Part shown: positions 27,751 through 58,294 of the stretch, one piece after another
Layout: every line of letters starts with the position of its first letter
Position numbering within the stretch: the stretch's first letter is position 1
Virus record (IMG/VR): IMGVR_UViG_3300027844_001828
Span: 124,001 to 188,000 of that record
Strand: one strand, 5' to 3'
Length of the DNA stretch: 64,000 nucleotides
The notes under the pieces: generated by a model
Database searches by the model: none
What the model was told of the DNA's origin: nothing
What the model saw: only the letters and a program-made list of their open reading frames with translations
Program-made: the position numbers and the translations under genes

Positions 27751-27830
27751 AATATCTCTTCAACACAGCTTGAAAACCAGGTTTGGCGAGCTATATTCTA
27801 ACCTTAACCAAACAACAGGAGAGCATCAAA

Positions 27831-29780
27831 ATGAGTCTTACCCCCACACAATTGACTGAAGCGAGTGAACTTATTACAAAACTTAGGTTGTGGAAAAACG
27901 CCTATTACATTGATAACAAGCCAGTTGTGTCAGATCAGGTATATGATGGCGGCGAAATGCGCCTCAAGCAGTTGATTCCTGATCACCCGTTCTTCGATGA
28001 GGTTGGATCGACAGTAGATGGGTTCAAGCCTATCGACTATGTTGCCGCAGGCGGTGAAAAGATGCTCAGTCTTGAAAAAGCCTATACAGAGCCGGAAGTG
28101 ACAAAATTCGCCGGGAAGGACGCATGGGTTCCAATGGTCAAGCTTGACGGAACTTCGCTCCGAGCAATCTACAGCGGCGGTAAGATCGAACTTGCCCACA
28201 CAAGAGGTAATGGAACTGTTGGTGATGACGTTACCAACAACTTCTACTTTGTGAAAGGATCGACTCCCAAGAAATACAAATGGGACACCTTTGAAGTCAA
28301 AGGCGAAGTTTGCATGACCTTTGATGATTTCGATGCGGTTAACATCGAAAGAGAAAGGGATGGGGAAGAAGTCTTCAAAAACCCCCGGAATGCCGCCAGT
28401 GGGTCTCTTAAGCAATTGGACATGTTCGAGACCGCAAAAAGAAAATTGCAGTTCGTCGCCTACGCAATAAAAGTAGAGGGGCACAGTTTCAAGTCGAAGA
28501 CTGAAATGCTTGATTCCTTGGAAGAAATGGGCTTCGTCACGGCAAGACTCAAGATTAAATTCAATACGATTGCTGATGTCATTGATAAAGTGACGAAGAT
28601 GCGTGAAAAAATTCCGATTCCGATTGATGGTATCGTCTTCGCTCTTGATGCCGTATCAGTGAGAGAAAAGAAAGGCTATACTGGTCATCACCCGAAATAC
28701 GAAATGGCTTACAAGTTCGCATCCGAAAGCGGGATCACCAAGTTGCTCGATTACGAATGGAACGTCACGAGAACTCGTCGTATTGTTCCCGTTGGTCTCA
28801 TTGAAGACATCGAACTCTCAGGGGCTGTTTGCTCAAGAGTCACGCTTCATAATGCGAAATGGGTCCATGACAAACATATTGCTATTGGCGAAGAGATTGT
28901 TATTGAAAGAAGCGGCGATGTCATTCCTCACTTTGTCAAAACTGTGAGAGCTACAAAAGACATTCCCTGGTCCTCGAAAGACAATCTTCCGACCAAATGC
29001 CCTGCCTGTAGAACCACACTTGTCAGAGTAGGCAATGTTGACCTCGGATGTCCTAACGAACATTGCTCTGGTGCTGCTTACGAGGCGATTATGCACTATG
29101 TAGGCAAGCCAGTTGTTAATATCAAGGCGGTAGGTGACAAATTGATCGCCCAACTCATCAAAGCGAATCTTATTGAAGACCCCGCAGACCTCTTCACATT
29201 AACCAAGAGTGACCTTATGACCCTTGATCGAATGGGTGATAAGAAGGCTGAAAAGACACTCGAAGCGATTAATAAGGCAAGGACTCAAGACGTGCAAACA
29301 TTTCTCAGGTCACTTGGTGTTGAATTACTTGGAAAGGATGTGTCTGAAAAGATCGCAGACTTCGTTGATCTTGATACATTAACTGTGACACGTGATTTGA
29401 CGCATATTGATGGAATAGCTGAAACGACAGCAACAGCGGTGACAGAAGGTCTTGACAAATCCAGACCACTTGCAGATAAGTTGCGTCAATATGTCAAGAT
29501 CACAACTGGTAAAGCTGTTGCACTTGGTAATTCCCTCGAAGGAAGCGCATTTTGTGTCAGCGGGAGCGTCGAATTTGATCTCGACGGTGAAAATTATTCA
29601 GAACGTAGTCAAATTCAGAACTTGATCAAGTCATACGGTGGTAAGGTCTCCAGTTCTGTATCTGGCAGAACGAGTTACCTCGTTGCTGGCCCAGGGTCTG
29701 GAAGCAAGTCAACAAAAGCAGATGACCTCGGTGTTACAATCATCGATGGTAATAAATTGGCAGAATTGATTGAAAATTGA
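27831..29780 (+). CDS. ligA: NAD+-dependent DNA ligase
   Basis: KLDG adenylation motif, TRGNG..GDDVT, FKNPRNAASGSLKQ, IDGIV, Zn finger, HhH, BRCT; promoter TTGAAA-N16-TATATT at 27770-27797. Confidence 0.95.
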   Translation: MSLTPTQLTEASELITKLRLWKNAYYIDNKPVVSDQVYDGGEMRLKQLIPDHPFFDEVGSTVDGFKPIDYVAAGGEKMLSLEKAYTEPEVTKFAGKDAWVPMVKLDGTSLRAIYSGGKIELAHTRGNGTVGDDVTNNFYFVKGSTPKKYKWDTFEVKGEVCMTFDDFDAVNIERERDGEEVFKNPRNAASGSLKQLDMFETAKRKLQFVAYAIKVEGHSFKSKTEMLDSLEEMGFVTARLKIKFNTIADVIDKVTKMREKIPIPIDGIVFALDAVSVREKKGYTGHHPKYEMAYKFASESGITKLLDYEWNVTRTRRIVPVGLIEDIELSGAVCSRVTLHNAKWVHDKHIAIGEEIVIERSGDVIPHFVKTVRATKDIPWSSKDNLPTKCPACRTTLVRVGNVDLGCPNEHCSGAAYEAIMHYVGKPVVNIKAVGDKLIAQLIKANLIEDPADLFTLTKSDLMTLDRMGDKKAEKTLEAINKARTQDVQTFLRSLGVELLGKDVSEKIADFVDLDTLTVTRDLTHIDGIAETTATAVTEGLDKSRPLADKLRQYVKITTGKAVALGNSLEGSAFCVSGSVEFDLDGENYSERSQIQNLIKSYGGKVSSSVSGRTSYLVAGPGSGSKSTKADDLGVTIIDGNKLAELIEN

Positions 29781-35291: not shown

Positions 35292-37226
35292 ATGACAATA
35301 CGTGGATACCACAAGATCGCTATTGCTGTACCCAAGCTCACCCTTGCAGATCCAGCCGCAAACGCTGAAGAAATTTGTAAGCAGATATCCTCTGTGCAAA
35401 ACACAGGTGTTTCAGTGATGCTTTTCCCGGAACTCTGTGTGACTGGATACTCATGTGGAGACCTCTTCCAGAGTAGAGCCTTGATAGAGGCCGGGTATGC
35501 TGCTTTAGGTAAAATCGCTGAAATGACAAAATGGGTTGACGGTTTACAAAGCGTCCCCACGGTGATTGTCGGCGCTCCCATTATAGCGTATGGAAAGTTG
35601 TATAACTGTGCTATAGTAATCTCTGATGGCAAAGTTTCTGGAATAGTACCAAAGAGTTACCTCCCCAACTACAAAGAGTTTTATGAGAAGAGATGGTTTG
35701 CTTCTGGAAAGGGGGTCAAAAACGACTCTTTGTCAGGGATTAATGATAGTCAAATAAGTTTCGGCACCGATTTGATTTTTAATTGCCGCAATGACGATCC
35801 ATTCCCCTTTGCTGTTGAAGTGTGCGAAGACTTGTGGGCTGTAAACCCTCCCAGCAATGATTACGCACTTGCCGGTGCCGAAGCTATTTTTAACTTGTCA
35901 GCGAGTAATGAACTTGTTGGTAAAGCATCTTTTAGAAAAGATCTTGTGGTTGCACATAGCGCCAAATTAATGTCTGCATATTTTTATGCCTCATCTGGAA
36001 TTTACGAGTCTGTTTCAGACGTGGTATTCGGTGGACATATGATGGCCGCAGTAAACGGGCACTTGATTAAAGAGAACGATAGGTTCAATCGTGAATCAGA
36101 AGTGATGACTGTTGCCGTTGATTTTGAAGCTATAGAACAACAACGTCGTTCCGAATCAATCTTTAGAGATTATGACACCATTGAAATGAGAGGTCAGGAT
36201 GTCAATCTTTACCGAACTGCCAATGCTGACTATTCAGATCTTGTCATTGATCCACATCCATTTGTCCCGTCTAATGAAAGTGTCATGAATGAGCGGTGTC
36301 AAGAGATTTTCACGATTCAATCAACAGCACTCGCCAATCGACTTCAACATGTCGGTGAAAATACGAAAGCGGTTATTGGCGTATCGGGAGGACTTGATTC
36401 AACACTTGCACTTCTTGTTGTTGAAAAAGCATTCAAACTCTTGGATAAAGATCTTGAAGATATCATTGCAGTAACAATGCCTGGACCCGGAACGTCAGAT
36501 AGAACCTTTAAAAATGCAAACGAGTTGTGTTTTGAAATGGGCATGGGATTAAAGGAAATAAGAATTAAAGAGGCTTGTGAACAACACTTAAAAGACATTG
36601 GACATGAATCGACAAGTGATGTGACATACGAAAACGTTCAAGCCCGTGAGCGCACACAAGTATTAATGGACCTTGCCAACAAACATGACGGTATCGTCAT
36701 TGGAACAGGTGATCTTTCAGAGATCGCACTTGGCTGGTGTACATATAATGGGGATCACATATCAATGTATGCTGTTAATTGCAGTGTTCCTAAGACCTTG
36801 GTGAAGCACTTGGTTTCATGGGTGGCTGATAGTGGTAATGTTACCACCAGAACAGGGGAAATTTTGCATGATATTGTTGATACGCCAATCTCTCCAGAAT
36901 TACTTGCGCCAAAAGATGGTGAGATCTCTCAAAAGACAGAAGATATCATCGGACCATATGAGCTTCATGATTTTTTCCTTTACTATACAATAAAGTTTGG
37001 GTTTACACCTGATAAGATTATCACTCTTGCCAAACTCGCATTCACAGAATATGAAGAGGCGGAGATTAAAACTTGTATGGAGACTTTTATCAAGAGATTT
37101 TTTGGGAATCAATTCAAACGCAATTGCATACCTGACGGGCCAAAGGTCGGTAGTATCTCATTGTCGCCTCGTGGAGACTGGAGAATGCCAGTTGAGGCCA
37201 GTTCAGCGGCCTGGATGAAAAGTTGA
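35292..37226 (+). CDS. nadE: glutamine-dependent NAD+ synthetase
   Basis: Nitrilase triad FPELC / PKSYLPNYKEFYE / VCEDLW; synthetase GVSGGLDST, ENVQARERT, GDLSEIALGW, FKRNCIPDGPKVG; promoter TTGACA-N16-TATGTT at 35225-35252. Confidence 0.96.
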   Translation: MTIRGYHKIAIAVPKLTLADPAANAEEICKQISSVQNTGVSVMLFPELCVTGYSCGDLFQSRALIEAGYAALGKIAEMTKWVDGLQSVPTVIVGAPIIAYGKLYNCAIVISDGKVSGIVPKSYLPNYKEFYEKRWFASGKGVKNDSLSGINDSQISFGTDLIFNCRNDDPFPFAVEVCEDLWAVNPPSNDYALAGAEAIFNLSASNELVGKASFRKDLVVAHSAKLMSAYFYASSGIYESVSDVVFGGHMMAAVNGHLIKENDRFNRESEVMTVAVDFEAIEQQRRSESIFRDYDTIEMRGQDVNLYRTANADYSDLVIDPHPFVPSNESVMNERCQEIFTIQSTALANRLQHVGENTKAVIGVSGGLDSTLALLVVEKAFKLLDKDLEDIIAVTMPGPGTSDRTFKNANELCFEMGMGLKEIRIKEACEQHLKDIGHESTSDVTYENVQARERTQVLMDLANKHDGIVIGTGDLSEIALGWCTYNGDHISMYAVNCSVPKTLVKHLVSWVADSGNVTTRTGEILHDIVDTPISPELLAPKDGEISQKTEDIIGPYELHDFFLYYTIKFGFTPDKIITLAKLAFTEYEEAEIKTCMETFIKRFFGNQFKRNCIPDGPKVGSISLSPRGDWRMPVEASSAAWMKS

Positions 37227-39119: not shown

Positions 39120-39173
39120 CGACTTGCTATCCCCGAATGATGAACTATGTTATGAGTCTAAGAGGAACTAACT

Positions 39174-39557
39174 ATGTACAAAATCAAAATAACCTATGAT
39201 ACCGGAGACTCGTTCAACCATTATACTGATCAGGTTGAATATCTTGACATCACCTTCAAGGATCTCGAAAAAGCCAAATAGGCTATTTTCGAGATTGAAG
39301 AACATTACACTTTCTATATAACCTATAAGGAAGAGACAAATGTTGGCAAGAAGGAAAAGTCAAAGGCGTTACGTGATGCTGAGAAGAAGCATTGGCATAA
39401 CAGGGAGTATACATTATTTACTATTCATCTTGAAAACGATGATGGAGAAAGAGTTGACGAACATGTTTTCTGGTGCGGATATTTTGAAACACTTGGTGGC
39501 GCAGAAATTGAAGCGGAACCTGAAAGTGGAATGTCATTTAAGCCAAATAGATATTAG
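39174..39557 (+). pseudogene. 127-codon phage hypothetical gene interrupted by in-frame TAG at 39279-39281
   Basis: Frame open before and after the stop (…KDLEKAK*AIFEIEEHY…FWCGYFETL…); own promoter (39124-39151) and GAGG RBS. Confidence 0.65.
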
Positions 39558-39575: not shown

Positions 39576-40613
39576 GTGAAAAGAATGATAAAATTCACAG
39601 GCATTGGCGCGTTTAGAAACGTCATTAAAGCTGTTTGCCATCGTTCCGCCTATATTGGTATGGACGATCAAGGCGAGCCTATTTATGACGGGACCAGACC
39701 AAAGCCAACGATCACATTCAATGGTGCTGTTAAGCTTCATGGAACTAACGCTGGTGTTTCTTATGAGCATGCGACCGGAGAATTTTGGGCGCAATCAAGG
39801 AAAAATACCATCACTCCAGAGAAAGACAATGCGGGCTTTTCCTTCTTTGTCGAATCTCACAAGGATGTCTTTCTTGAAATGTTCAAGAGCCTCCCATGTG
39901 ACGGAATAACAACCATTTATGGAGAGTGGTGCGGCAAGGGTGTTCAAAGCACGGTTGCCATTACTGAACTTGATAAATTCTTCGTGATCATTGGTGTTAA
40001 AGAGAGTCCTCTTGAGCCAAGCGAAGATGAAGTTGCGATCTGGCTCCCTGATGATAAAACACAGCCGTTGTCTTCAAATGATGATAGGGTCTTCAACATT
40101 CTTGACTTTCCTACGTTCTCAATTGATATAGATTTCAAGAACCCTGAACTCTCAACGAACAGGATGGTTGAAATCACAGCAGCTGTCGAGGCAGAGTGTC
40201 CAGTTGCTAAGCAGCTTGGTGTTTCTGGAATTGGAGAAGGTGTTGTTTGGAAGTCTGACGTTAATGGAGAGAGATATATCTTCAAGGTTAAAGGCGACGA
40301 ACACGCTGGCAAGTCCAAGGTCAAGACGCTTAAGCCTGTTGACAATGAAAGGCTTCAAAGGATTAACGACATTGCTGAGCAAGTAACTCCAGTGTGGAGA
40401 CTCGAACAGGCTATTCAAGAGACCTTTGACACCAATAATGGTGGCGATATCGACAGAAAAGGTCTTGGAGATTTCCTCAGATGGGTTGTCAAAGACGTGC
40501 TCAAAGAAGAGATCGATGTTATTAGCGATGCTGGTTTCGAACCAAAAGACGTTAATAAGAAGATTTCTGAAGTTTGTAGAACTTGGTTCTTCGAAAGGGA
40601 AAGCCAGGTTTAA
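39576..40613 (+). CDS. RNA ligase, Rnl2 family
   Basis: Motif I VKLHGTN, IYGEWCG, IGEGVVW, FKVKG; GTG start. Confidence 0.88.
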   Translation: MKRMIKFTGIGAFRNVIKAVCHRSAYIGMDDQGEPIYDGTRPKPTITFNGAVKLHGTNAGVSYEHATGEFWAQSRKNTITPEKDNAGFSFFVESHKDVFLEMFKSLPCDGITTIYGEWCGKGVQSTVAITELDKFFVIIGVKESPLEPSEDEVAIWLPDDKTQPLSSNDDRVFNILDFPTFSIDIDFKNPELSTNRMVEITAAVEAECPVAKQLGVSGIGEGVVWKSDVNGERYIFKVKGDEHAGKSKVKTLKPVDNERLQRINDIAEQVTPVWRLEQAIQETFDTNNGGDIDRKGLGDFLRWVVKDVLKEEIDVISDAGFEPKDVNKKISEVCRTWFFERESQV

Positions 40614-40624
40614 CAATCATAGCC

Positions 40625-40700
40625 GGGGGACATCCGTCCCCCGATGCCTTAACTACCCCCCCCCATCGCACAGTTGGATGGGGTGTTGGTTATTTTATTT
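40625..40700 (+). terminator. two GC hairpins after the RNA ligase gene; probable terminator
   Basis: GGGGGAC-ATCC-GTCCCCC and CCCCATC...GATGGGG followed by T-rich tract. Confidence 0.45.
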
Positions 40701-41033
40701 TACAACTGTACTTAAAAGTAAGAAGGGAATTAATAACGATTTCAAAGTTGATAAGTTTGCCATAAACCTTATTGGCCATGGGTCAATAGTCGCTGGCAAT
40801 TCAGTTGATGATTTGAAAGGGATTGAATTTGTTCGTAGACCATCACCAGAATTGTTGGATAATTAAGCATGTTTTATGCAGCCTGGATGAAAAGTTTAAG
40901 ATGGTATAATAATATTGATGTTTCCCATTTCAATAATAATATTTGGGATAACAGAAACCTTTAACCAATGGAATCATTTCGGGTTAGCACTTATTGCAAT
41001 CGGATTTATTTTCATGAAAATACTGAGTGGATC

Positions 41034-41444
41034 ATGAAGGAAATTATAAAGTCAAAAGTTACGGGACATGATATGACTTCCGTTCATCTTGAAGGAAGAA
41101 AGATTAGTATCGATGTCAAGATCGTATCATTGGTCAAATTGATCGATGGATTAGAAGGTGCGGAGGTAACATCCTCGTGTCACGGTGATGCAGAGAGATC
41201 GCCATACATAAATTGGGTGTTGTATGACGAAGATGAGAACTCACAAGTAGACGACCTTATTGCTGTAATACATGGGTTCAAGCATGAGGTAGATGTTGAA
41301 TTTAACATGAGTATCATGCTCAAAGAGGGACACAGCGACATGTTGTTCACATTGACTTTTTTCGGCGGACAACCTCAAATGTTGCAGTTTTCTAGGTATG
41401 CTAAGAAAAAACTCAAAAAGAGGGTTGATATTCCGAAAAGGTGA
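41034..41444 (+). CDS. hypothetical protein
   Basis: ORF track (internal ATG 41034 likely start); TSSCHG motif. Confidence 0.6.
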   Translation: MKEIIKSKVTGHDMTSVHLEGRKISIDVKIVSLVKLIDGLEGAEVTSSCHGDAERSPYINWVLYDEDENSQVDDLIAVIHGFKHEVDVEFNMSIMLKEGHSDMLFTLTFFGGQPQMLQFSRYAKKKLKKRVDIPKR

Positions 41445-41538
41445 ACTATGATAAGGTGTGTTTGAAACCATTACAATTAAATAGTAAACTACTTATTAAT
41501 AATTTCAATCTTTATTCTCACATGCGGCTGTAAGAGCT

Positions 41539-41808
41539 TTGAGCCTGTTCAACAGGTGTGGGATATACTTACAGAGTCTGAGAAGTGATGGTTATGAGTG
41601 TGACATTATGGTTGTCAACTCATACTCTCCTAAACATTTGGTGATTGACAATTACAGAGTCCTTCATACTGTTGTACGAGTAGTAGTTGATGGTCAATAC
41701 CGTTACATTGACCCCGCAAATTTCAAGTGGTCGGAAAACTTAAATGAATCCGCCGCATTTGTCAGAGTCGTTTCCGAAGAAGACCTATTAAGAAAAAATT
41801 TTCAATAA
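41539..41808 (+). CDS. hypothetical protein, start uncertain (possibly frameshifted)
   Basis: ORF track, TTG start; a lipoprotein-like LTCGC segment lies in another frame just upstream. Confidence 0.4.
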   Translation: MSLFNRCGIYLQSLRSDGYECDIMVVNSYSPKHLVIDNYRVLHTVVRVVVDGQYRYIDPANFKWSENLNESAAFVRVVSEEDLLRKNFQ

Positions 41809-41813
41809 TTTTA

Positions 41814-41977
41814 AACAAGGCCGGTTGGCTTAGAAGCAGCCATCCCTTAATGAGTGACAAGTGAGATGTTAAGGCTGACTAAGACGTATTCGTGAAAGGC
41901 CGATGCTCACGTTGGAGAAAGTTGATTGCGCAGTCAACCAGTATCTTGAAGTCTTTGGCGTAACAGCACACCTTGTT
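41814..41977 (+). ncRNA. candidate structured RNA mimicking 23S rRNA H43-H44 (uL11/thiostrepton-binding GTPase-associated centre) with a 102-nt insert
   Basis: GGTTGGCTTAGAAGCAGCCATC (41823-41844) and GCGTAACAGCACA (41958-41970) match 23S 1058-1079 and 1091-1103; closed by perfect 7-bp helix AACAAGG/CCTTGTT; intergenic. Confidence 0.75.
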
Positions 41978-42003
41978 CCTTTTAATCTTAACAGAGAAGA
42001 GCG

Positions 42004-42306
42004 ATGAATAACGAATATAAGAAAAAAGATTTTGAACACATGGCCAACAAACGGCGCAATGCCTTGAGTGTTATTGCAGACAAACTCGGCAAAGAACATA
42101 CCATTACCAAAATGATGGGTGGTATGGCTTGGGGGCGAAATAATCCAGAGCCACATCCTGGATATGGGGCAAAGGACGCCATAAGAGGAATGGGGTATCT
42201 TGATGGTTCATTTCATATCTTGAATATTTGGGCGCGTGACAATGATCGCACGGCACAAAAAATCATGCTCGCTATTTACCCTATGAAATGGGAGTCTGCG
42301 AAATGA
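42004..42306 (+). CDS. hypothetical protein
   Basis: ORF track; chain of ATGA-overlapping genes. Confidence 0.65.
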   Translation: MNNEYKKKDFEHMANKRRNALSVIADKLGKEHTITKMMGGMAWGRNNPEPHPGYGAKDAIRGMGYLDGSFHILNIWARDNDRTAQKIMLAIYPMKWESAK

Positions 42307-42698
42307 GCGTCAAAGATTTAGTATATCACAAATTTAATAAGCGGTTCCCAAAAAAATTGTTAGAAGTTAAGTATGTGGACCTCACTCTTACAAAATCTTT
42401 TGGAAGAGGCAACGCAAGACATACCGACTCGCGCAGGAGTGGGACTTGGAAAGAAACACATGGTTGGAAATATAGGTTACCATACAATGTAGAGTCAGTT
42501 TCGGAGAAGTGGTATATCAAAAGATATATTTCCAGGAAGGTTCTTGGATTTGAATTCGTTTACAAGGAAGCGGTTGCCGAAGTCCATTTTGAAGAAATAA
42601 ACAATCACGCTTGTTTTGGTGATACTTGGCCGCAAAGAGTTTGGGACGTTTGGGAAAAACATAATTTGGTAAATCAACCAACTGGAGATACTAAATGA
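42303..42698 (+). CDS. hypothetical protein
   Basis: ATG 42303 overlapping the upstream stop. Confidence 0.65.
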   Translation: MSVKDLVYHKFNKRFPKKLLEVKYVDLTLTKSFGRGNARHTDSRRSGTWKETHGWKYRLPYNVESVSEKWYIKRYISRKVLGFEFVYKEAVAEVHFEEINNHACFGDTWPQRVWDVWEKHNLVNQPTGDTK

Positions 42699-43054
42699 AA
42701 AATCTTGATAAAATATTCTCGGAGGAAGATATCACTCTTCTCATTGAATATGCAGATGGGAGAAAGCATGATAATTTTGAATACGAAATAGAGACTTTTG
42801 ATCATGAAAATATAGGTAGGACTATGCTTCACATGAAAAACGGTCTTTGTGAACAGAGGCTTATCGCTCGTTTTCACTATCCTAAAAACGAGGGTTCTGA
42901 TGATGGTTATGGGTATCCAGAAATGATGTTGGTAATAGGTAATGATGGCGATGTTTCCTTTCAAAATTTGGGGAACTGTCGTTTCCGTCTCCACGAACCT
43001 CTCAAGGCTTATGAATTGATGTTGAGACGATTAAGACCAGAACTTTTTGAATAG
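42695..43054 (+). CDS. hypothetical protein
   Basis: ATGA overlap; ends just before the ncRNA promoter. Confidence 0.65.
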   Translation: MKNLDKIFSEEDITLLIEYADGRKHDNFEYEIETFDHENIGRTMLHMKNGLCEQRLIARFHYPKNEGSDDGYGYPEMMLVIGNDGDVSFQNLGNCRFRLHEPLKAYELMLRRLRPELFE

Positions 43055-43057
43055 GAC

Positions 43058-43086
43058 TTGACACAGGGTAAAGACTGTGTTATGTT
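43058..43086 (+). promoter_or_regulatory. promoter of ROOL-like RNA (TTGACA-N17-TATGTT, extended TG)
   Basis: Consensus -35; no downstream ORF, so it drives an RNA. Confidence 0.75.
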
Positions 43087-43091
43087 GTATC

Positions 43092-43722
43092 ATGTTAGAG
43101 ACAATTGAATATCGAAAGTTTGATGGCGTGGAGACAGGATTATGGGTAACCGTAGAATTGATGTTAACGTAGCGCCAGCAGTGGAGTGGAGACGTACCAC
43201 TATGGAGTGGAATTCATAGAAGCTGTGAGGGACACATAATAAGACTTTTAAAGAGGCTTGAGGATTAGGGCGTAACCCACTCAAGTAACTATGTAGCCCT
43301 CTCGTTTTGCCGGTCAGAAGCGATAGTGTAGACCGGTGAAAGCTGGCATTTATGCCTAAATAAATAGGGAGACCGTCTACCCGAATAAAGTCGGCACTCA
43401 GTTCCCCAGAGTTAATGGGGACGGGATTTTGGAAGCCTCCCCAGATTGGCTCTACGTTTTGCATTGTTCGGAAATTCAATGTCGTAGCTGCGCACTACGT
43501 TAGGTGGCTCCAATGCGCAATTTTTATTTTGATGCTGTGAACGTAATTAATGCGAACAAGGGAGTTGGTGTCAGGGAGCGAGGGTAACGGAATGAGTACC
43601 GGTGAACCTAGCGGATGGGGATACTTGATCAGCATCTTTGATTAACCGGATGGCGCTATCCTTAAAGTGTCGGAAAACACTATCCTTAAGTGTGGGCAGA
43701 ATATTCTTTAGGCCCTAAACTA
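43092..43722 (+). ncRNA. large structured ncRNA, ROOL-like (~630 nt)
   Basis: No coding frame; many hairpins (TTGAG..GGG-CGTAA-CCC..CTCAA, CCGGTC..GACCGG, CCCCA..TGGGG, CGTAG..CTACG, GTGT-CGGAAA-ACAC); 5' ACAATTGAATA...ATGGCGTGGAGACAGGATTATG and 3' AAAGTGTCGGAAA resemble ROOL segments as I recall them; identity needs a covariance-model search. Confidence 0.65.
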
Positions 43723-43954
43723 AAAGATTATCGACATCGGATACAGATGGGGCCTGGGGCGGCATTGAGGCTTCCTTGATAATACATATATCAAGTAAAT
43801 AAAATGTGTCGTCATGGCGTATCGCGTTAGGATAGTTTCCATACGCCTTAATTTTAGGATCTAAAGCGCCAGCAAATGTCCACCTCCATACGGGGGGTGG
43901 ACAGCGCTGGTGAGGAAATTTTGTGAAAGTTTTGAAATTTTTTCTCAAAGCGGC

Positions 43955-43982
43955 TTGCAAAACGGAAAAGTCACGGTATAAT
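43955..43982 (+). promoter_or_regulatory. promoter of GOLLD-like RNA (TTGCAA-N16-TATAAT)
   Basis: Consensus -10; followed by ~950 nt non-coding DNA and a terminator. Confidence 0.75.
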
Positions 43983-43989
43983 AAGAAGC

Positions 43990-44930
43990 ATGTTGGAAGT
44001 GGTTAACGCCGCATCTAACAGAAAGTAAAAACTGAATATTTAATTTAAGGGCAGTATGATGTCCTCCTGTTCCCTTCGGGTAACAGGTTAAGATAAGCCA
44101 TGGAAACATGGTGAAATGGGGGACCCGCTACGGGCCTCGCCAAACTCTTCGGAGAGTGGTCAGTTATGCAAACCAAGCTTCTGTGAATTTCCCTCTTGGG
44201 GAGTTATACTTGAAGGTGGAGATTAAATGAATGTGGTGGCCAACGGTGGCTATGTTCTACTAACGTTAGCGACGAGAACTTATCTTATGCCAAACATCGA
44301 AAGTTAAGAAGCAAAGGGTAGTTGTGTTGTCTGAGTTTGCAGACAAAGGCTTCACAGCAGATTGTTGGGTAACAGGAAACCATTTAACAATGGGGGACCT
44401 GAAGTCCTGTAAATCCGTCTGGTAGCCCGCAAGGCCAAAGATATGAGGTGTGTGGCATTCTACTTCTCAAAAGGAAGCGGAACCATCGAGAGCGCACATC
44501 TTGGTAGATTTATCTGTAGCTCAATAGCAGAGCTATTCCCTCATACGGAATCGGTTTTGGTGCAACTCCAAACGGATATTTTTTAACGAAAATAAAAAAA
44601 CGCAAAGACGCTCTCGGTAGTAGGTGAAAATGGCCTAATTCCAAATCCTTCGGGTAATTTGGAGACGTGAAGCTCGCAAGGCAGATCGTTTTAGGACAAG
44701 TTAAAATTTAGTGGATTAGCGTTCACGAACTGTTCATAAGGCAGGAATGGAAACGAGTTCTGATTAGCTTACTATGACGGCGCAGTCGCAGGCGCTTAAT
44801 AAAATTGCGGTCATGATCGATGTCTGGTGTCCAGCTTGCTGGCCCAGAAGGAAATTAGGGCAAGGCACGTCGCAAGCGTACTGTAATCCTGAAGAGTCGA
44901 TTATTGAAGGTGTATTTCTCAACCTTTTAA
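43990..44930 (+). ncRNA. large structured ncRNA, GOLLD-like (~940 nt)
   Basis: Bracketed by promoter and terminator; UUCG and GNRA hairpins (CCTGTT-CCC-TTCG-GGT-AACAGG, CCATG-GAAA-CATGG, CTC-TTCG-GAG, GCCC-GCAA-GGC, ATCC-TTCG-GGT); motifs GGGTAGTTGTGTTG, GTGTGTGGCATT..CTCAAAAGG, CGCAAAGAC, TTAGTGGAT, CGCAAG as recalled for GOLLD. Confidence 0.75.
44510..44580 (+). tRNA. tRNA-Met(CAT)-like element embedded in the GOLLD-like RNA
   Basis: Acceptor TTATCTG/CGGATAT (1-72 mismatch), D arm GCTC-AATAGCA-GAGC, anticodon arm ATTCC-CTCATAC-GGAAT, T arm TTTGG-TGCAACT-CCAAA; no encoded CCA; atypical T loop. Confidence 0.7.
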
Positions 44931-44935
44931 TTTTT

Positions 44936-44970
44936 TGTCAGGTGACTTCGGTCGTCTGGCATTTTTTTTT
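44936..44970 (+). terminator. intrinsic terminator of GOLLD-like RNA
   Basis: TGTCAGGTGAC-TTCG-GTCGTCTGGCA followed by T9. Confidence 0.88.
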
Positions 44971-45079
44971 GCCTATATAACATAAGGAATATGAATAATG
45001 GAGGATACAGTAAAATAATTTTTCGATGAGTTTATTAAAAAGTTCGATCTAAAAGAGTTGATCATTGATACGTTCTATC

Positions 45080-45745
45080 TTAATCGTTCCAATAATCTTT
45101 CTCGTCATCGTCGTTATCCTCAAAGGCGTGAGGGCTTACTTCCCCATCCCATTCATAATCGATATTGAAATCTTCTTGAAGCATTTCAAAGTTGTTCAAA
45201 TCATTATCTATAAGTGAATGTCCTTGACCGTGTCCAAAGACAACCTCTTGGACTCTACCTTTTGGCATTTCAACGCCAAAATATTCAATGCCATTTGGAA
45301 TTACTCCATAAACTGGTTGGTCATTTGTTAAGTGTGAGGGAGTTATATCTATAACCTTTCCATTTAATGAATTCCACCCGTGATTCCTGAAAAATGTTCC
45401 GGCATATCCTTCAACATATTTGAAGTCATTGTCATGTAACATTAATAATTGAGAAGAGTAGAAACACTCTTTGACTTCCCCGCGTTTAAAAATACTATAA
45501 AGGCTTTCAATTTTTTCCTGTTCTTCAGGGGTCAATTCAGCAGACTCATACAGTTTGCCATGGGTCAAATAGAAATATGGCATCGTAGGATAATGAAAAT
45601 CGCTTGTTTGAGAATTCATTCCTACTTGCATAATGTGTTGCATAGCCAGAGCAGTCATAATCTGGCTGTGTGAAAACTGATTTTTCCAGGCCAATAATTC
45701 AGGCGTTATGTTCTCGATCCAATTTGATTTTTTGTACCAATTCAT
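45080..45745 (-). CDS. hypothetical protein with MNWYKKS N-terminus
   Basis: GGAG RBS before ATG 45745; GYA...HGWNS..G..ID segment. Confidence 0.7.
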   Translation of the reverse strand: MNWYKKSNWIENITPELLAWKNQFSHSQIMTALAMQHIMQVGMNSQTSDFHYPTMPYFYLTHGKLYESAELTPEEQEKIESLYSIFKRGEVKECFYSSQLLMLHDNDFKYVEGYAGTFFRNHGWNSLNGKVIDITPSHLTNDQPVYGVIPNGIEYFGVEMPKGRVQEVVFGHGQGHSLIDNDLNNFEMLQEDFNIDYEWDGEVSPHAFEDNDDDEKDYWND

Positions 45746-45858
45746 AGGGTCTCCAATTCCACTTATTATTCTTAACATACACAGAAAAACCCTTCCGGCA
45801 AAGCTTACTATATGGTCATGTGGCAGTATAGTATTACATGTAACAGGAGTAATGTCTT

Positions 45859-46218
45859 ATGGGAATTGAATATAAGAGGTATTTACTCTTTGACCATCGT
45901 GCTGTAAAGTACTTAAACGAAATACTTTCTAAAACAGAGGCTAATATCGTAATAAGTTCGTCTTGGAGAAAAATCCATACTTTAGATGAAATTAGAGAGC
46001 AATTTAAGTCTCAGGGTATAATTGATGTCGATAGAGTCGTCAGTATGACAGGTGGGTCAAAAGACGGGATAAGAGGCGGAGAGATTCAAACCTGGATTGA
46101 CAATAACCCATGTGGTAATTTTGTAATAATAGATGATGACTCAGACATGATTCATCTCATGGACCATCTCGTTTTAACAAGAAACGCGACCGGCTTATCT
46201 TATCGAAACAAACTTTAA
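45859..46218 (+). pseudogene. HAD-domain (RNA-repair 'Swiss army knife'-like) protein lacking N-terminal DxD motif
   Basis: IVISSSWR, RGGEIQTWI, FVIIDDDSDM present; motif I absent. Confidence 0.5.
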
Positions 46219-46247
46219 ATTATAAGAAGATTGAAAAGGAGTTAAAA

Positions 46248-46502
46248 ATGGCGGCGACTAAAGAAAATATCAAGAAATGGATCGTCGATTCAAGCGACAG
46301 AAAAATGGATTATATGATCGTCGTTTGTGATCAATATGATTACGAAAATTTCCCAGTTTTTGTAACTTCTGAAAATCTTCACAAAGAAGCTAAAAGATAT
46401 GGGAGAGATATGCATAAGGTCATGGAGATCTATGATTTGAATGGCGACATTGAGGCCCAATTAGATATGCATAGAGCTTTTCCGCCAGGATTCCCACTTT
46501 AG
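46248..46502 (+). CDS. hypothetical phage protein
   Basis: AAGGAG RBS; YMIVVCDQYDYENFPVFV. Confidence 0.7.
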   Translation: MAATKENIKKWIVDSSDRKMDYMIVVCDQYDYENFPVFVTSENLHKEAKRYGRDMHKVMEIYDLNGDIEAQLDMHRAFPPGFPL

Positions 46503-49082: not shown

Positions 49083-49152
49083 TTGGTTATCTGATAACCA
49101 CTTGAAATTTTCTGAAACCATGTTATGATAATAAGGTAACAGGAGGATCAGG

Positions 49153-49494
49153 ATGGGTAAAGGTAAAAAAGAAATCAGGTGATTATTCCGGTCTTCGGTA
49201 TTTAAGCGTGACGACTATACATGTGTATGTTGCAAGGTCATTGGGGATGTAGACGCACATCATATTATAGATCGGAATCACTTTCCTGACGGCGGTTATG
49301 TCATAGACAACGGGATTACCCCATGTCCAGATTGTCACATCTTGGCAGAAGTTTATCACGATGGCGATGGCAGGGAGTATTCAGAAGGGAAGCACCCTCT
49401 CGACTTGTTAAAGGCAATAGGGTCTTCATTTATAGACAACCCACCGTGTTCATGTAACAACTGTGTTGTTTGTGATCACTTTATAAGAAAGTGA
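49153..49494 (+). pseudogene. HNH endonuclease gene with in-frame TGA at codon 10 (not in ORF track)
   Basis: AGGAGG RBS; MGKGKKEIR*LFRSSVFKRDDYTCVCC..DAHHII..NGITPCPDCH; TGA at 49180-49182. Confidence 0.7.
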
Positions 49495-49501
49495 GGCTTA
49501 C

Positions 49502-51475: not shown

Positions 51476-51635
51476 AGAACTCCAAGAATTAGTCAATGGT
51501 AGATTCATTGACGCCTTTGGCAGAACACCACTTCGGCAGCGACAGGAAGATATTTTGGGCGAGGCGATTGAACTCAAAAACGCAACAGATATTACGAATC
51601 TCAGAGAAGAGACGGGGGATTTGCTTCAACAATGA
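51465..51635 (+). CDS. MazG-like helical fragment, apparently the frameshifted N-terminus of the NadD gene
   Basis: EDILGEAIEL...NLREETGDLL; continuation (AST)MMLCSESGWSVEEL lies in another frame. Confidence 0.55.
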   Translation: MKIKELQELVNGRFIDAFGRTPLRQRQEDILGEAIELKNATDITNLREETGDLLQQ

Positions 51636-52342
51636 TGTTGTGTAGTGAGTCTGGCTGGTCAGTAGAAGAGCTTGTGCAGTCAACTCTTAATAAGACAGAG
51701 AGAAGAAAGGAGCAATACCACACGTTGGGGAGAAAGACAAAGGTCGCTCTTCTTGGTGGGGCTTTTAATCCGCCTACGATTGGCCACTTAAGGCTTGCAC
51801 AGTTCATTCTCGATACAAGTAAGAACTTCGATGAGGTTTGGTTTGTACCGTGTTATCAGCACATGTATAACAAAGAACTCGTTACACCAGAGCATAGATT
51901 GGCTATGTGTAACTTGTTATGCGCTAACGATTGCAGAATAAAGACATTTGATTATGAGATCAAAAATCAATTACGTGGTGAGACTTACCATTTTGTAAAG
52001 AGATTGCTTGATGAAGACTTTGCAAAAGACCAATATGATTTTAGTATGATAATTGGGTTGGACAATGCTAACACATTTGATAAGTGGGTGAACTACGAAG
52101 ATCTTGAGAAGATGATGCGCTTTGTCGTGGTGTCTCGACAAGGGACCGAAAGAGATGAGTCTGTAGACTGGTACTTAAAGCCACCACACATTTATCTTTA
52201 CAGTGGTGGTGATGTCCCAGAGATATCTTCAACGGAAATCAGAAGGTGTATCGTCGAAGACGACACATCACAAGCCGCTTACGTTAAAGAGTTCATGGAT
52301 GATGGGGTATGGAAATACCTTTGTGATAACGAACTTTATTGA
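51632..52342 (+). CDS. nadD: nicotinate-nucleotide adenylyltransferase
   Basis: LLGGAFNPPTIGH, HRLAM, IIGLDNANTFDKW, EISSTEIR. Confidence 0.88.
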   Translation: MMLCSESGWSVEELVQSTLNKTERRKEQYHTLGRKTKVALLGGAFNPPTIGHLRLAQFILDTSKNFDEVWFVPCYQHMYNKELVTPEHRLAMCNLLCANDCRIKTFDYEIKNQLRGETYHFVKRLLDEDFAKDQYDFSMIIGLDNANTFDKWVNYEDLEKMMRFVVVSRQGTERDESVDWYLKPPHIYLYSGGDVPEISSTEIRRCIVEDDTSQAAYVKEFMDDGVWKYLCDNELY

Positions 52343-56851: not shown

Positions 56852-58294
56852 ATGGGCCTCAAAGCACACAAGTTTGGCACACATCCGTTTGACACAACCT
56901 ACGATGTGATTGATTCCGCCACACTCCAATGCACTGACCTCAAGAAAGGGTCTAACAAGTTCTATCAGATGGAGTTACACAAAAACGCCTCTGGTTATTG
57001 GAGGATCTTCACAGCTAACGGGCGCACAGGCTCATACTCTACCCAATTGGAGCGTATGCCTGAAGACGAGACGGCAGGACGCGCAGAGTACGCAAAGATT
57101 TTCCGCACCAAGACCACCCGCAAGAGTCAGCCTTATACTAAGGTTGATGTTGTGAATTCCAACCTTGGAACAGATGCTGGGAACCAAGTTGTTCAATCAG
57201 ACGACTTCGATCAGAAGAACATCACCGTTGCCGACACAGGCAAAAAGAATAAATCAAAGAAGGTTATTCCAATCAAGATTTCTCAGTTGGTTTCCAGGCT
57301 CTACAGTGAAGCCGGTAACGCTTGTAAAAGCCAGCTTCATGGAAGTGTTCAAGCGAGTGAAGAGAACCCTCTTGGGACTCTTACAAAAACTCAGATTGAA
57401 GATGGTAGAGCCATTCTTCAAGAGGCGAATGCCATCTTGGTCGCTGACGCCACTCGTATTGACTCAATTGAATCTGAGGTTATCGCTATAACTGACAAGT
57501 TCTACAGCACTATTCCACAGGAAATTGCTCTTCGCCCGAAAACTAAAGCCGGAGAAGATGCCCGTGATGATTGGATGCGTGGAATTGCCCTCAACAATGC
57601 TACAATCCTTGATGATAAGTTTGATCTTCTCGACCTTCTTGGTGATGTGAAGGGAATGATGGGCGGTTTCGCCACGACAGATGAAGAAAAACGTTTGAAA
57701 GAGGCGAACTGTGAGTTTTCTGAAGTGGACAGTGCCACTTTCAAACAGGTCTGCGATCTTATTGTCAATACTCAGTCGAAGCACCACAATTGGAAGTTGA
57801 ATCCAAGGCGAATTTTTTCAATGAAAAGCAAATCTCAATCAAGTCATAAAAAAACAATGGGGGAAACCGGGAATTGTCAAGAACTTTTCCATGGATCTGG
57901 ATCTCAAAATATTTTGGGAATATGTAAACGAGGAATTTTAATACGTCCTCCTGGGGTCTATATTACTGGCGCGTTATTGGGAAACGGGGCTTATTTCGCT
58001 AATAATAGTACAAAATCAAGTCAATATTCTACTGGCAGATTTGGTGGATCTGGATCTTCCAATGGAAATACTTCATTTATGTTTGTTGCCAACGTGGCTC
58101 TTGGGAAAGTGAAAAAATTAAGCAAGGGTAGCAGTTCTATTGTCAAAGCACCGAATGGTTTTGATTCTGTTATGGGGGCTGCTAATTATACAGATTGTGG
58201 ATGGAGTAAACTCCTTCATGATGAATTTGTAGTTTATGATGTTAAACAGCATACTCTTGACTACTTGATTGAATTTGAACAATCTTATAGATAG
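56852..58294 (+). CDS. WGR-domain poly(ADP-ribose) polymerase (WGR + helical + catalytic)
   Basis: NKFYQMEL..NGRTG (WGR); LGTLTKTQIEDG..IL, FYSTIPQ (helical); LFHGS, LGNGAYFA, STKSSQYS, MFVANVALG, HDEFVVY (H-Y-E triad). Confidence 0.9.
   Translation: MGLKAHKFGTHPFDTTYDVIDSATLQCTDLKKGSNKFYQMELHKNASGYWRIFTANGRTGSYSTQLERMPEDETAGRAEYAKIFRTKTTRKSQPYTKVDVVNSNLGTDAGNQVVQSDDFDQKNITVADTGKKNKSKKVIPIKISQLVSRLYSEAGNACKSQLHGSVQASEENPLGTLTKTQIEDGRAILQEANAILVADATRIDSIESEVIAITDKFYSTIPQEIALRPKTKAGEDARDDWMRGIALNNATILDDKFDLLDLLGDVKGMMGGFATTDEEKRLKEANCEFSEVDSATFKQVCDLIVNTQSKHHNWKLNPRRIFSMKSKSQSSHKKTMGETGNCQELFHGSGSQNILGICKRGILIRPPGVYITGALLGNGAYFANNSTKSSQYSTGRFGGSGSSNGNTSFMFVANVALGKVKKLSKGSSSIVKAPNGFDSVMGAANYTDCGWSKLLHDEFVVYDVKQHTLDYLIEFEQSYR

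What the first reader, a model, noticed from the sequence alone, without database searches (positions are those of the whole stretch)
43058..44970. ROOL-like and GOLLD-like giant RNAs in tandem, each with its own promoter
Seen: about 1.9 kb with no credible ORF, containing promoter (43058-43086), ~630-nt hairpin-rich RNA, second promoter (43955-43982), ~940-nt UUCG/GNRA-rich RNA and a strong terminator (44936-44970). Established: ROOL and GOLLD are large ornate ncRNAs of phages/prophages with unknown function, reported to form RNA-only multimeric cages. Inference: segment motifs identify these two as ROOL and GOLLD. Their adjacency, 1.1 kb from the 23S mimic, in a probable non-Firmicute jumbo phage suggests a coordinated RNA-based module, possibly translation-related.
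Basis: partly seen in the sequence, partly recalled or inferred. Interest (0 to 1): 0.85.

Follow-up and report, generated by a model that had tools for sequence, protein, structure and literature searches.

The report
GOLLD RNA plus an orphan RNA
This 1.9-kb gene-free stretch of a jumbo phage holds a genuine GOLLD giant RNA with a tRNA-Met built into it, preceded not by a ROOL RNA but by an unrelated, promoter-equipped non-coding stretch that has no relative in any database searched.

Summary
Window 43055-45079 is the largest protein-free interval in the window. It has two good sigma-70-type promoters (43058-43086 and 43955-43982) and one strong intrinsic terminator (44936-44970).

The downstream RNA is a true GOLLD. 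Rfam RF02032 matches 44445-44925 over the full model at E 1.9e-40 (148.1 bits, against a curated cut-off of 150). It has a canonical 5' domain of about 455 nt and the conserved junction motif. A tRNA-Met(CAU) at 44510-44580 sits in the inter-domain linker, a known GOLLD arrangement.

The upstream RNA ("RNA1", about 43090-43912) is not ROOL. The Rfam ROOL model gives no hit at E<=10, yet it finds the Lactobacillus salivarius ROOL at 130 bits. RNA1 has no relative in 50,697 phage genomes, 70 other GOLLD loci, IMG/VR, JGI metagenomes or GTDB genomes.

RNA1 is probably an RNA gene: it has a promoter, no credible ORF, GC content like GOLLD's and unlike ordinary spacers, the lowest folding energy in the window, and a -33 kcal/mol 3' hairpin. 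Without homologues this is unproven.

The host phage is a jumbo phage related to Xanthomonas phages XacN1 and Xoo-sp13. Verdict: new member of a known kind (GOLLD) plus an orphan RNA candidate.

The parts
43058..43086 (+). Promoter P1 of RNA1: -35 TTGACA, 17-nt spacer, extended -10 TGtTATGTT. It starts 4 nt after the stop codon of ORF 42695-43054.
43090..43912 (+). RNA1: an orphan non-coding candidate RNA of about 0.82 kb. It is not ROOL. GC is 0.45. It ends in a -33 kcal/mol hairpin at 43866-43912. The 3' end is not defined by a classical terminator, so read-through into GOLLD is possible.
43955..43982 (+). Promoter P2 of the GOLLD RNA: TTGCAA-16-TATAAT behind an A/T-rich upstream stretch. 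The predicted start is about 43988. That is 467 nt before the 3'-domain pattern, the same offset at which the flanking tRNA-Met ends in most other GOLLD loci.
43988..44444 (+). GOLLD variable 5' domain (about 455 nt). It is partly alignable to the 5' domains of Caulobacter phage CcrKarma and of IMG/VR loci L026 and L052. It ends in the conserved AGUAG-hairpin-GAAA...AU-GAGG junction.
44445..44925 (+). GOLLD conserved 3' domain (Rfam RF02032, model positions 1-416 of 416).
44510..44580 (+). tRNA-Met(CAU) embedded in the GOLLD linker. It is elongator-like or Ile2-like, not initiator-like. It has a U1-U72 mismatch, no GG in the D loop, a UGCAACU T loop and no encoded CCA.
   Evidence: and direct reading
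44936..44970 (+). Intrinsic terminator: 11-bp stem, UUCG loop, T9 tail. It starts 11 nt after the end of the GOLLD model.

Best explanation
The interval holds two RNA genes on the + strand, both read by the host sigma-70 RNA polymerase.

The downstream gene (about 43988-44961) is a GOLLD RNA. It has a variable 5' domain and a conserved 3' domain. The single-stranded linker between the first 3'-domain hairpin and the rest of that domain carries a tRNA-Met(CAU).

By homology with GOLLDs solved by cryo-EM, it is inferred to assemble into an RNA-only multimeric cage, with the tRNA tethered on the flexible linker. The tRNA could be held there (the published 'inhibited storage' idea) or released by RNase P and 3' processing, which would cut the GOLLD in two. 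Which of these happens is not shown.

The upstream gene (RNA1, about 43090-43912) is a separate, lineage-specific non-coding RNA candidate. It is not ROOL and has no detectable relative, and its function is unknown. It most likely makes a stable structured transcript from its own promoter, protected by a very strong 3' hairpin, with some read-through into GOLLD.

Shown: the GOLLD identity, the embedded tRNA, the promoter and terminator motifs, the absence of a ROOL match and the absence of homologues. Inferred: transcription, cage formation, the fate of the tRNA, and that RNA1 is functional.
For: GOLLD:
- RF02032 scores 148.1 bits, E 1.9e-40, over the full model.
- A 69-nt block is 81% identical to Caulobacter phiCbK-like phages. 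There the region is also a GOLLD (171 bits) with an embedded tRNA-Lys.
- The junction motif is conserved across 13 GOLLDs.
- The embedded tRNA lies at +55, the same site as in eight other distinct loci.
- The predicted start at -467 matches the usual 5' boundary of -421 to -485.
- Published work reports cage formation, tRNAs in the linker, and the storage hypothesis (10.1101/2024.12.08.627333; PMC12990946).

RNA1:
- It has a near-consensus promoter.
- It has no credible ORF.
- Its GC is 0.450, equal to the GOLLD domains (0.451 and 0.445). Ordinary spacers in this window are 0.275-0.414.
- It has the lowest MFE of 44 tiles, with z = -4.0 to -5.2.
- It ends in a -33 kcal/mol hairpin.
Against: - The GOLLD score is 1.9 bits below Rfam's curated cut-off. 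Two other tRNA-bearing GOLLD loci also fall below it.
- RNA1 has no homologue anywhere, so there is no covariation support. All copies found are 100% identical.
- Its folding z-score is matched by some coding tiles, and its local z-scores are ordinary.
- It has no classical terminator of its own.
- No expression data were available.
Confidence: 0.7

Rival explanations
1. RNA1 is a very divergent ROOL. On this view the phage carries both cage-forming RNAs in tandem.
For: - The context fits: ROOL and GOLLD share the niche of phages and tRNA islands (PMC5737381).
- RNA1 contains GGUGAAAGCUGG preceded by a helix, which resembles the conserved ROOL stretch GGUGAAAgUUGG (direct comparison).
- Phage K is reported to have two lncRNAs that resemble GOLLD and ROOL by position (PMC9241854).
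Against: - RF03087 gives no hit at E<=10 in 6 kb or in 1.1 kb, on either strand. The same tool finds the L. salivarius ROOL at 130.4 bits.
- The other conserved ROOL motifs are absent or out of order.
- The interval is about 830-870 nt, against a ROOL mean of 581 nt.
- There was no ROOL within about 138 kb around 11 GOLLDs.
Confidence: 0.05
2. RNA1 is not a separate gene. It is a long 5' leader or extension of one 1.9-kb transcript that starts at P1 and ends at the only strong terminator. P2 would be an internal or secondary promoter.
For: - There is no classical terminator between P1 and P2. The strong hairpin at 43866-43912 is followed by its U-run only after about 9 nt.
- There is a single strong terminator, at 44936-44970.
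Against: - P2 is as good a promoter as P1 and has an A/T-rich upstream region.
- Its predicted start coincides with the canonical GOLLD 5' boundary seen in more than 50 loci.
- No other GOLLD locus has an RNA1-like extension.
Confidence: 0.15
3. The RNA1 interval is not a functional RNA. It is either decayed or junk spacer DNA, or it encodes small proteins such as the 129-aa or 81-aa - strand ORFs.
For: - It has no homologue and no covariation.
- The 81-aa ORF has a codon score (0.155) within the range of real genes.
- Folding z-scores do not discriminate here: the true GOLLD scores only -1.5.
Against: - The phage is densely coded, and its other spacers are 415 nt or shorter and AT-rich, whereas RNA1 is 0.87 kb with GC 0.45.
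- A near-consensus promoter points into it.
- The 129-aa ORF scores -0.108, below antisense background.
- Both ORFs start with TTG, and no Shine-Dalgarno motif is visible upstream of the 81-aa ORF.
- Both are opposite in strand to their neighbours and were not called by the public pipeline.
- Neither has a Pfam or PHROG hit.
Confidence: 0.2

Closest known systems
GOLLD RNA (Rfam RF02032), especially members with a tRNA in the inter-domain linker: Mycolicibacterium GOLLD with tRNA-Phe, and Caulobacter phage CcrKarma GOLLD with tRNA-Lys
   Same: - Full-length match to the conserved 3' domain.
- A variable 5' domain of about 455 nt ending in the conserved junction.
- A tRNA inserted at the same linker position (+55).
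- A phage context and a terminator right after the 3' domain.
   Different: - The score is 1.9 bits under the curated cut-off.
- It is not in a tRNA island: the embedded tRNA-Met is the only tRNA in 64 kb.
- It has its own sigma-70 promoter at the point where most GOLLDs abut a tRNA-Met.
- The host phage is an XacN1-like jumbo phage with no close sequenced relative.
ROOL RNA (Rfam RF03087)
   Same: Only the context: a large non-coding RNA candidate in a phage next to tRNA and GOLLD. One 12-nt look-alike motif is also shared.
   Different: - No covariance-model match at all.
- The interval is longer than ROOL.
- The other conserved ROOL motifs are absent.
- No homologues exist, so a ROOL-like architecture cannot be tested by covariation.
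The pair of abundant lncRNAs near tRNA genes in Staphylococcus phage K (Kayvirus), described as resembling GOLLD and ROOL by position (PMC9241854)
   Same: Two large non-coding RNAs lie side by side in a large lytic phage, in tRNA-associated territory.
   Different: No sequence relationship to RNA1 was found, and the Kayvirus RNAs have expression data, which RNA1 lacks.

Membership tests
GOLLD (RF02032) | Covariance-model match to the conserved 3' domain (P14-P27, including the pseudoknot) | tested here: met
   148.1 bits, E 1.9e-40, model positions 1-416 of 416. This is 1.9 bits below the curated gathering score of 150. Two other tRNA-bearing GOLLD loci (L053, L030) also fall below it.
GOLLD (RF02032) | A variable 5' domain of about 420-480 nt directly upstream, ending in the conserved junction (AGUAG, GNRA hairpin, GAAA..AU-GAGG) | tested here: met
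   There is 81% identity over 69 nt to CcrKarma, and nhmmer hits to L052, L011 and L026. The distance from the predicted start to the 3' domain is 467 nt, against 421-485 nt elsewhere.
GOLLD (RF02032) | Association with tRNA genes, either flanking or embedded in the linker | tested here: met
   tRNA-Met(CAU) at 44510-44580, which is +55 in the linker. Eight other distinct loci have a tRNA at the same site. This arrangement is described in PMC12990946 and 10.1101/2024.12.08.627333.
GOLLD (RF02032) | Phage or prophage context | tested here: met
   The contigs are 235-253 kb IMG/VR viral contigs. The neighbours include RNR, an RNA ligase and a PARP-like protein. The best-matching named phages for the 684-aa neighbour are XacN1 and Xoo-sp13.
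GOLLD (RF02032) | Self-assembly into an RNA-only multimeric cage (14-mer or 10-mer in solved members) | not testable with these tools
   This needs cryo-EM or mass photometry of the transcript.
ROOL (RF03087) | Covariance-model match to the ROOL consensus (574 positions, six multistem junctions, three pseudoknots) | tested here: not met
   No hit at E<=10 on either strand for 40500-46500 or for 43000-44100. Positive control: the L. salivarius pMP118 ROOL scores 130.4 bits against a gathering score of 99.1.
ROOL (RF03087) | Length near 581 nt | tested here: not met
   The distance from the P1 -10 box to the P2 -35 box is 868 nt, and no internal terminator supports a 580-630 nt product.
ROOL (RF03087) | Located in phages or prophages near tRNA genes | tested here: met
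   RNA1 lies next to the GOLLD and its tRNA-Met. This is context only and is not specific to ROOL.
ROOL (RF03087) | Homo-octameric cage formation | not testable with these tools
   This needs a structural experiment.

The most novel reading that the evidence does not exclude
RNA1 is the first seen member of a new class of large structured phage RNAs that works together with GOLLD. It might be a second self-assembling RNA, or a partner that regulates or loads the GOLLD cage and its tethered tRNA. On this reading it forms part of a translation-directed RNA island together with the 23S GTPase-centre mimic 1.2 kb upstream.
Probability: 0.12. Interest if true: 0.75.

Novelty: new member of a known kind. 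Interest (0 to 1): 0.4.

Why it matters
GOLLD is one of the few natural RNAs known to build protein-free cages, and its function is still unknown. This copy is useful for three reasons.
- It has its own clean promoter and terminator.
- It carries a single tethered tRNA-Met and sits outside any tRNA array. That makes it a simple construct for asking whether the linker tRNA is stored, displayed or released.
- It extends GOLLD to an XacN1-like jumbo phage lineage.

The correction also matters: there is no evidence for a ROOL-GOLLD tandem. The upstream RNA is an orphan, worth a transcript check but not yet a new family.

Tried and rejected
- **Rfam at permissive thresholds on RNA1.** Only chance hits appeared, to snoRNA, CRISPR-repeat and lncRNA models.
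- **blastn (word size 11) of RNA1 against 50,697 phage genomes at E<=10.** Only 22-38 nt chance matches.
- **nhmmer of RNA1.** No hits against 70 other GOLLD loci, and none against 84 non-self loci (824 kb) at E<=100.
- **Degenerate-pattern scans using the two - strand ORFs as probes.** IMG/VR, JGI metagenomes and GTDB genomes returned only identical copies of the same phage.
- **Microdiversity among the phage's own contigs.** All copies are 100% identical over 3.7-6.4 kb, so there are no compensatory changes to read.
- **Synteny through neighbouring proteins.**
  - The upstream 119-aa protein is an ORFan.
  - The 684-aa neighbour has relatives only at about 52% identity or less, and their loci and XacN1/Xoo-sp13 lack the RNA island.
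  - The three weak relatives of the downstream 221-aa protein have no adjacent RNA gap.
- **rRNA mimicry inside RNA1.** Only 11-nt chance matches to E. coli 16S and 23S.
- **Internal repeats or copies elsewhere in the window.** None of note.
- **RNA1-GOLLD duplex search with duplexfold.** Uninformative on sequences this long, and no better than shuffles.
- **Sliding 200-nt folding z-scores.** They do not single out RNA1, nor the true GOLLD.
- **An exact junction pattern (GCAAGGCNAAAGATATGAGG) in IMG/VR.** It found only this phage and CcrKarma.

Full report
**What is in the interval.** Window 43055-45079 is the largest stretch of the 64-kb window without a plausible protein gene.
- On the + strand no ORF exceeds 41 aa.
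- The two longer - strand ORFs (43090-43479, 129 aa; 43715-43960, 81 aa) both start with TTG and have no Pfam or PHROG match.
- A public pipeline that annotated an identical contig did not call them, and they have no relative in IMG/VR, JGI metagenomes or GTDB genomes.
- The 129-aa ORF has a codon-usage score of -0.108. That is below the mean of antisense ORFs inside real genes (0.053) and of real small genes (0.153).
  - TTGACA-17-TATGTT with an extended -10 TG at 43058-43086.
  - TTGCAA-16-TATAAT at 43955-43982.
  - An 11-bp UUCG-looped stem followed by T9 at 44936-44970.
- Sites matching 10 of 12 promoter positions number 28 on the + strand and 8 on the - strand of the window, and many lie between genes. 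The phage therefore plausibly uses host-type promoters.

**The downstream RNA is GOLLD.**
- At the curated threshold Rfam reports only a tRNA.
- At the E-value threshold, RF02032 GOLLD matches 44445-44925 over all 416 model positions with 148.1 bits and E 1.9e-40. This is 1.9 bits short of the gathering score.
- The shortfall probably reflects the 71-nt tRNA insertion. Two other tRNA-bearing GOLLD loci also fell below the cut-off, while nine others passed.
- Independent support comes from blastn. The only phage hits for the whole interval are a 69-nt block (window 44391-44459) in Caulobacter phiCbK-like phages. In CcrKarma that block lies in an unannotated GOLLD (171 bits) with a tRNA-Lys in the same linker position.
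- A pattern taken from the first 3'-domain hairpin retrieved 73 IMG/VR loci. The nine scanned loci that passed the cut-off score 161-242 bits.
- Aligned with 12 of these loci, the window shows the conserved junction that closes the 5' domain. Parts of its 5' domain match L052, L011 and L026.

**The tRNA and the boundaries.**
- ARAGORN and Rfam agree on a tRNA-Met(CAU) at 44510-44580. It begins 55 nt into the 3' domain.
- Eight other distinct loci carry a tRNA at this site: Lys (three loci), Leu, Pro and His, among others. Embedded tRNAs in the GOLLD linker are described in the literature, with an 'inhibited storage' idea (PMC12990946) and a display model (10.1101/2024.12.08.627333).
- Read directly, the tRNA is not initiator-like. 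It has C11-G24 and lacks the three G-C pairs in the anticodon stem. It also has a U1-U72 mismatch, no GG in the D loop, a UGCAACU T loop and no encoded CCA.
- In most loci a tRNA-Met ends 421-466 nt before the 3'-domain pattern, and the 5' domain follows it directly. Here the start predicted from P2 is at -467. P2 therefore sits exactly at the canonical 5' boundary, and the upstream RNA is not part of GOLLD as the family defines it.
- This GOLLD is unusual in lying outside any tRNA array. Its embedded tRNA is the only one in the 64 kb.

**The upstream RNA is not ROOL.**
- RF03087 gave no hit at E<=10 on either strand, whether 6 kb or only 1.1 kb was searched.
- As a positive control I located the published L. 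salivarius lncRNA (LSL_1885; PMC5643018) on pMP118. The same tool scored it at 130.4 bits against a cut-off of 99.1.
- RNA1 has one 12-nt look-alike of a conserved ROOL stretch (GGUGAAAGCUGG against GGUGAAAgUUGG). The other conserved motifs are missing or out of order, and the interval (868 nt between promoter boxes) is much longer than the 581-nt ROOL mean (PMC5737381).
- No ROOL was found in 138 kb around 11 diverse GOLLDs either. Nothing here supports a ROOL-GOLLD pairing.

**What RNA1 is.**
- It has no relative in 50,697 phage genomes, in 70 other GOLLD loci or 824 kb of fetched loci, or in IMG/VR, JGI metagenomes or GTDB genomes probed with degenerate patterns.
- All copies of the phage are identical. 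The flanking genes are ORFans or have only distant, non-syntenic relatives. Covariation, the usual proof of a structured RNA, is therefore unavailable.
- The case for an RNA gene is circumstantial but coherent:
  - A near-consensus promoter fires into it.
  - It is 0.87 kb without a credible ORF in a tightly packed genome.
  - Its GC content (0.450) equals that of the two GOLLD domains (0.451, 0.445) and of the 23S-mimic spacer (0.446). Eleven ordinary spacers range from 0.275 to 0.414.
  - It has the lowest folding energy of 44 equal-length tiles, with z = -4.0 to -5.2.
  - It ends in a -33 kcal/mol hairpin.
- Against this, some coding tiles reach z = -4.4, local z-scores are ordinary, and the true GOLLD itself scores only -1.5. 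Thermodynamics decides nothing here.
- I put about 55-60% on RNA1 being a functional RNA. The alternatives are a leader of a single long transcript (about 15%) and non-functional or protein-coding DNA (about 20%).

**Mechanism.**
- Shown: the motifs, the family membership and the tRNA.
- Inferred: host RNA polymerase transcribes both genes. The GOLLD folds and multimerises like its solved relatives (D7 14-mer for env-38; decamer for the S. agalactiae 3' domain). The tRNA-Met rides on the linker, either protected until needed or cut out by RNase P and 3' processing, which would split the RNA into two pieces.
- The neighbourhood contains an RNA ligase (39576-40613) and a HAD domain of the 'Swiss Army Knife' RNA-repair type (45859-46218). 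That fits a theme of keeping tRNA or translation working during infection, but it is only context.

**The wider module idea.**
- The '23S mimic' is real. Window 41824-41844 is 21/21 identical to E. coli 23S 1059-1079, helix 43 of the GTPase-associated centre.
- Similar 33-50 nt segments occur in 33 phage records, mostly in unannotated DNA. In Pseudomonas phages pf16 and UNO-G1W1 the segment lies between tRNA genes inside tRNA arrays. In jumbo phage GAP32 it lies in a spacer a few kb from tRNAs.
- The mimic and GOLLD thus share a preferred niche. However, none of the other sampled GOLLD loci carries the mimic, so their adjacency here is not a recurrent pairing.

**Verdict.** The interval is a new member of the GOLLD family, in an XacN1-like jumbo phage, with an embedded tRNA-Met. 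Next to it lies an orphan RNA candidate that is not ROOL.

Noticed in passing
window 41808-41905 (core 41824-41844); also L099:5001-5034, L100:5001-5053, L098:5001-5038: A mimic of helix 43 of the 23S GTPase-associated centre (the L11/thiostrepton region) is 21/21 identical to E. coli 23S 1059-1079. It lies just upstream of ORF 42004-42306. Similar segments occur in 33 phage records, mostly in unannotated DNA. In Pseudomonas phages pf16 and UNO-G1W1 they sit inside tRNA arrays, and one is present in jumbo phage GAP32. This looks like a recurrent small phage RNA element. No Rfam family reached its curated (gathering) score there; the only hit was a weak archaeal LSU rRNA match (17.3 bits, E 0.062).
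   Followed up: partly
L001:3055-3541 (Caulobacter phage CcrKarma, JX100811.1 about 102856-103342): phiCbK-like Caulobacter phages carry a GOLLD (171 bits) with an embedded tRNA-Lys. The GenBank record does not annotate it. A permuted tmRNA lies next to it on the opposite strand.
   Followed up: partly
L031:11704-12037, L036:5476-5873, L001:2228-2546: tmRNA genes lie within 0.5-2.5 kb of GOLLD in 3 of 12 loci examined with Rfam. GOLLD, tRNA arrays and tmRNA seem to share one RNA island.
   Followed up: no
IMG/VR loci L015-L083: In more than 50 of 73 GOLLD loci, many of them near-duplicates, a tRNA-Met(CAU) ends at a fixed 421 or 466 nt before the 3' domain, directly abutting the 5' domain. Several arrays also contain tRNAs with CTA anticodons (called Pyl; suppressor-like) and odd four-base anticodons.
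   Followed up: no
window 44774-44980 (+): A public pipeline called a 68-aa gene here (L007:3747-3953). It lies wholly inside the GOLLD 3' domain and terminator, so it is almost certainly a false gene call.
   Followed up: yes
window 39576-40613 and 45859-46218: An RNA ligase (PF09414, phrog_548) and a HAD_SAK_2 domain protein (the 'Swiss Army Knife' RNA-repair HAD) flank the RNA island.
   Followed up: no
window 27783-29780, 35292-37226, 51632-52342, 56852-58294: A cluster of NAD-related genes: an NAD-dependent DNA ligase, a glutamine-dependent NAD synthase, a cytidylyltransferase-like (NMNAT-type) protein, and a eukaryote-like WGR-PARP_reg-PARP protein. XacN1 and Xoo-sp13 also encode the PARP.
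   Followed up: no
window 39120-39533 and 49083-49497: Two further spacers of about 415 nt. The first has a local folding z of -4.2 (39201-39400) and lies upstream of the RNA ligase. The second has GC 0.414 and a TTGAAA-16-TGnTATGAT promoter at 49102-49129, upstream of the FtsH-like gene. Either could be a leader or a small RNA.
   Followed up: no
window 43168-43176 and 43867-43875: The 9-mer GCGCCAGCA occurs near both ends of RNA1. Either copy can pair with GCGCUGG at 43904-43910, which suggests a choice between a long-range closing helix and the local 3' hairpin.
   Followed up: no
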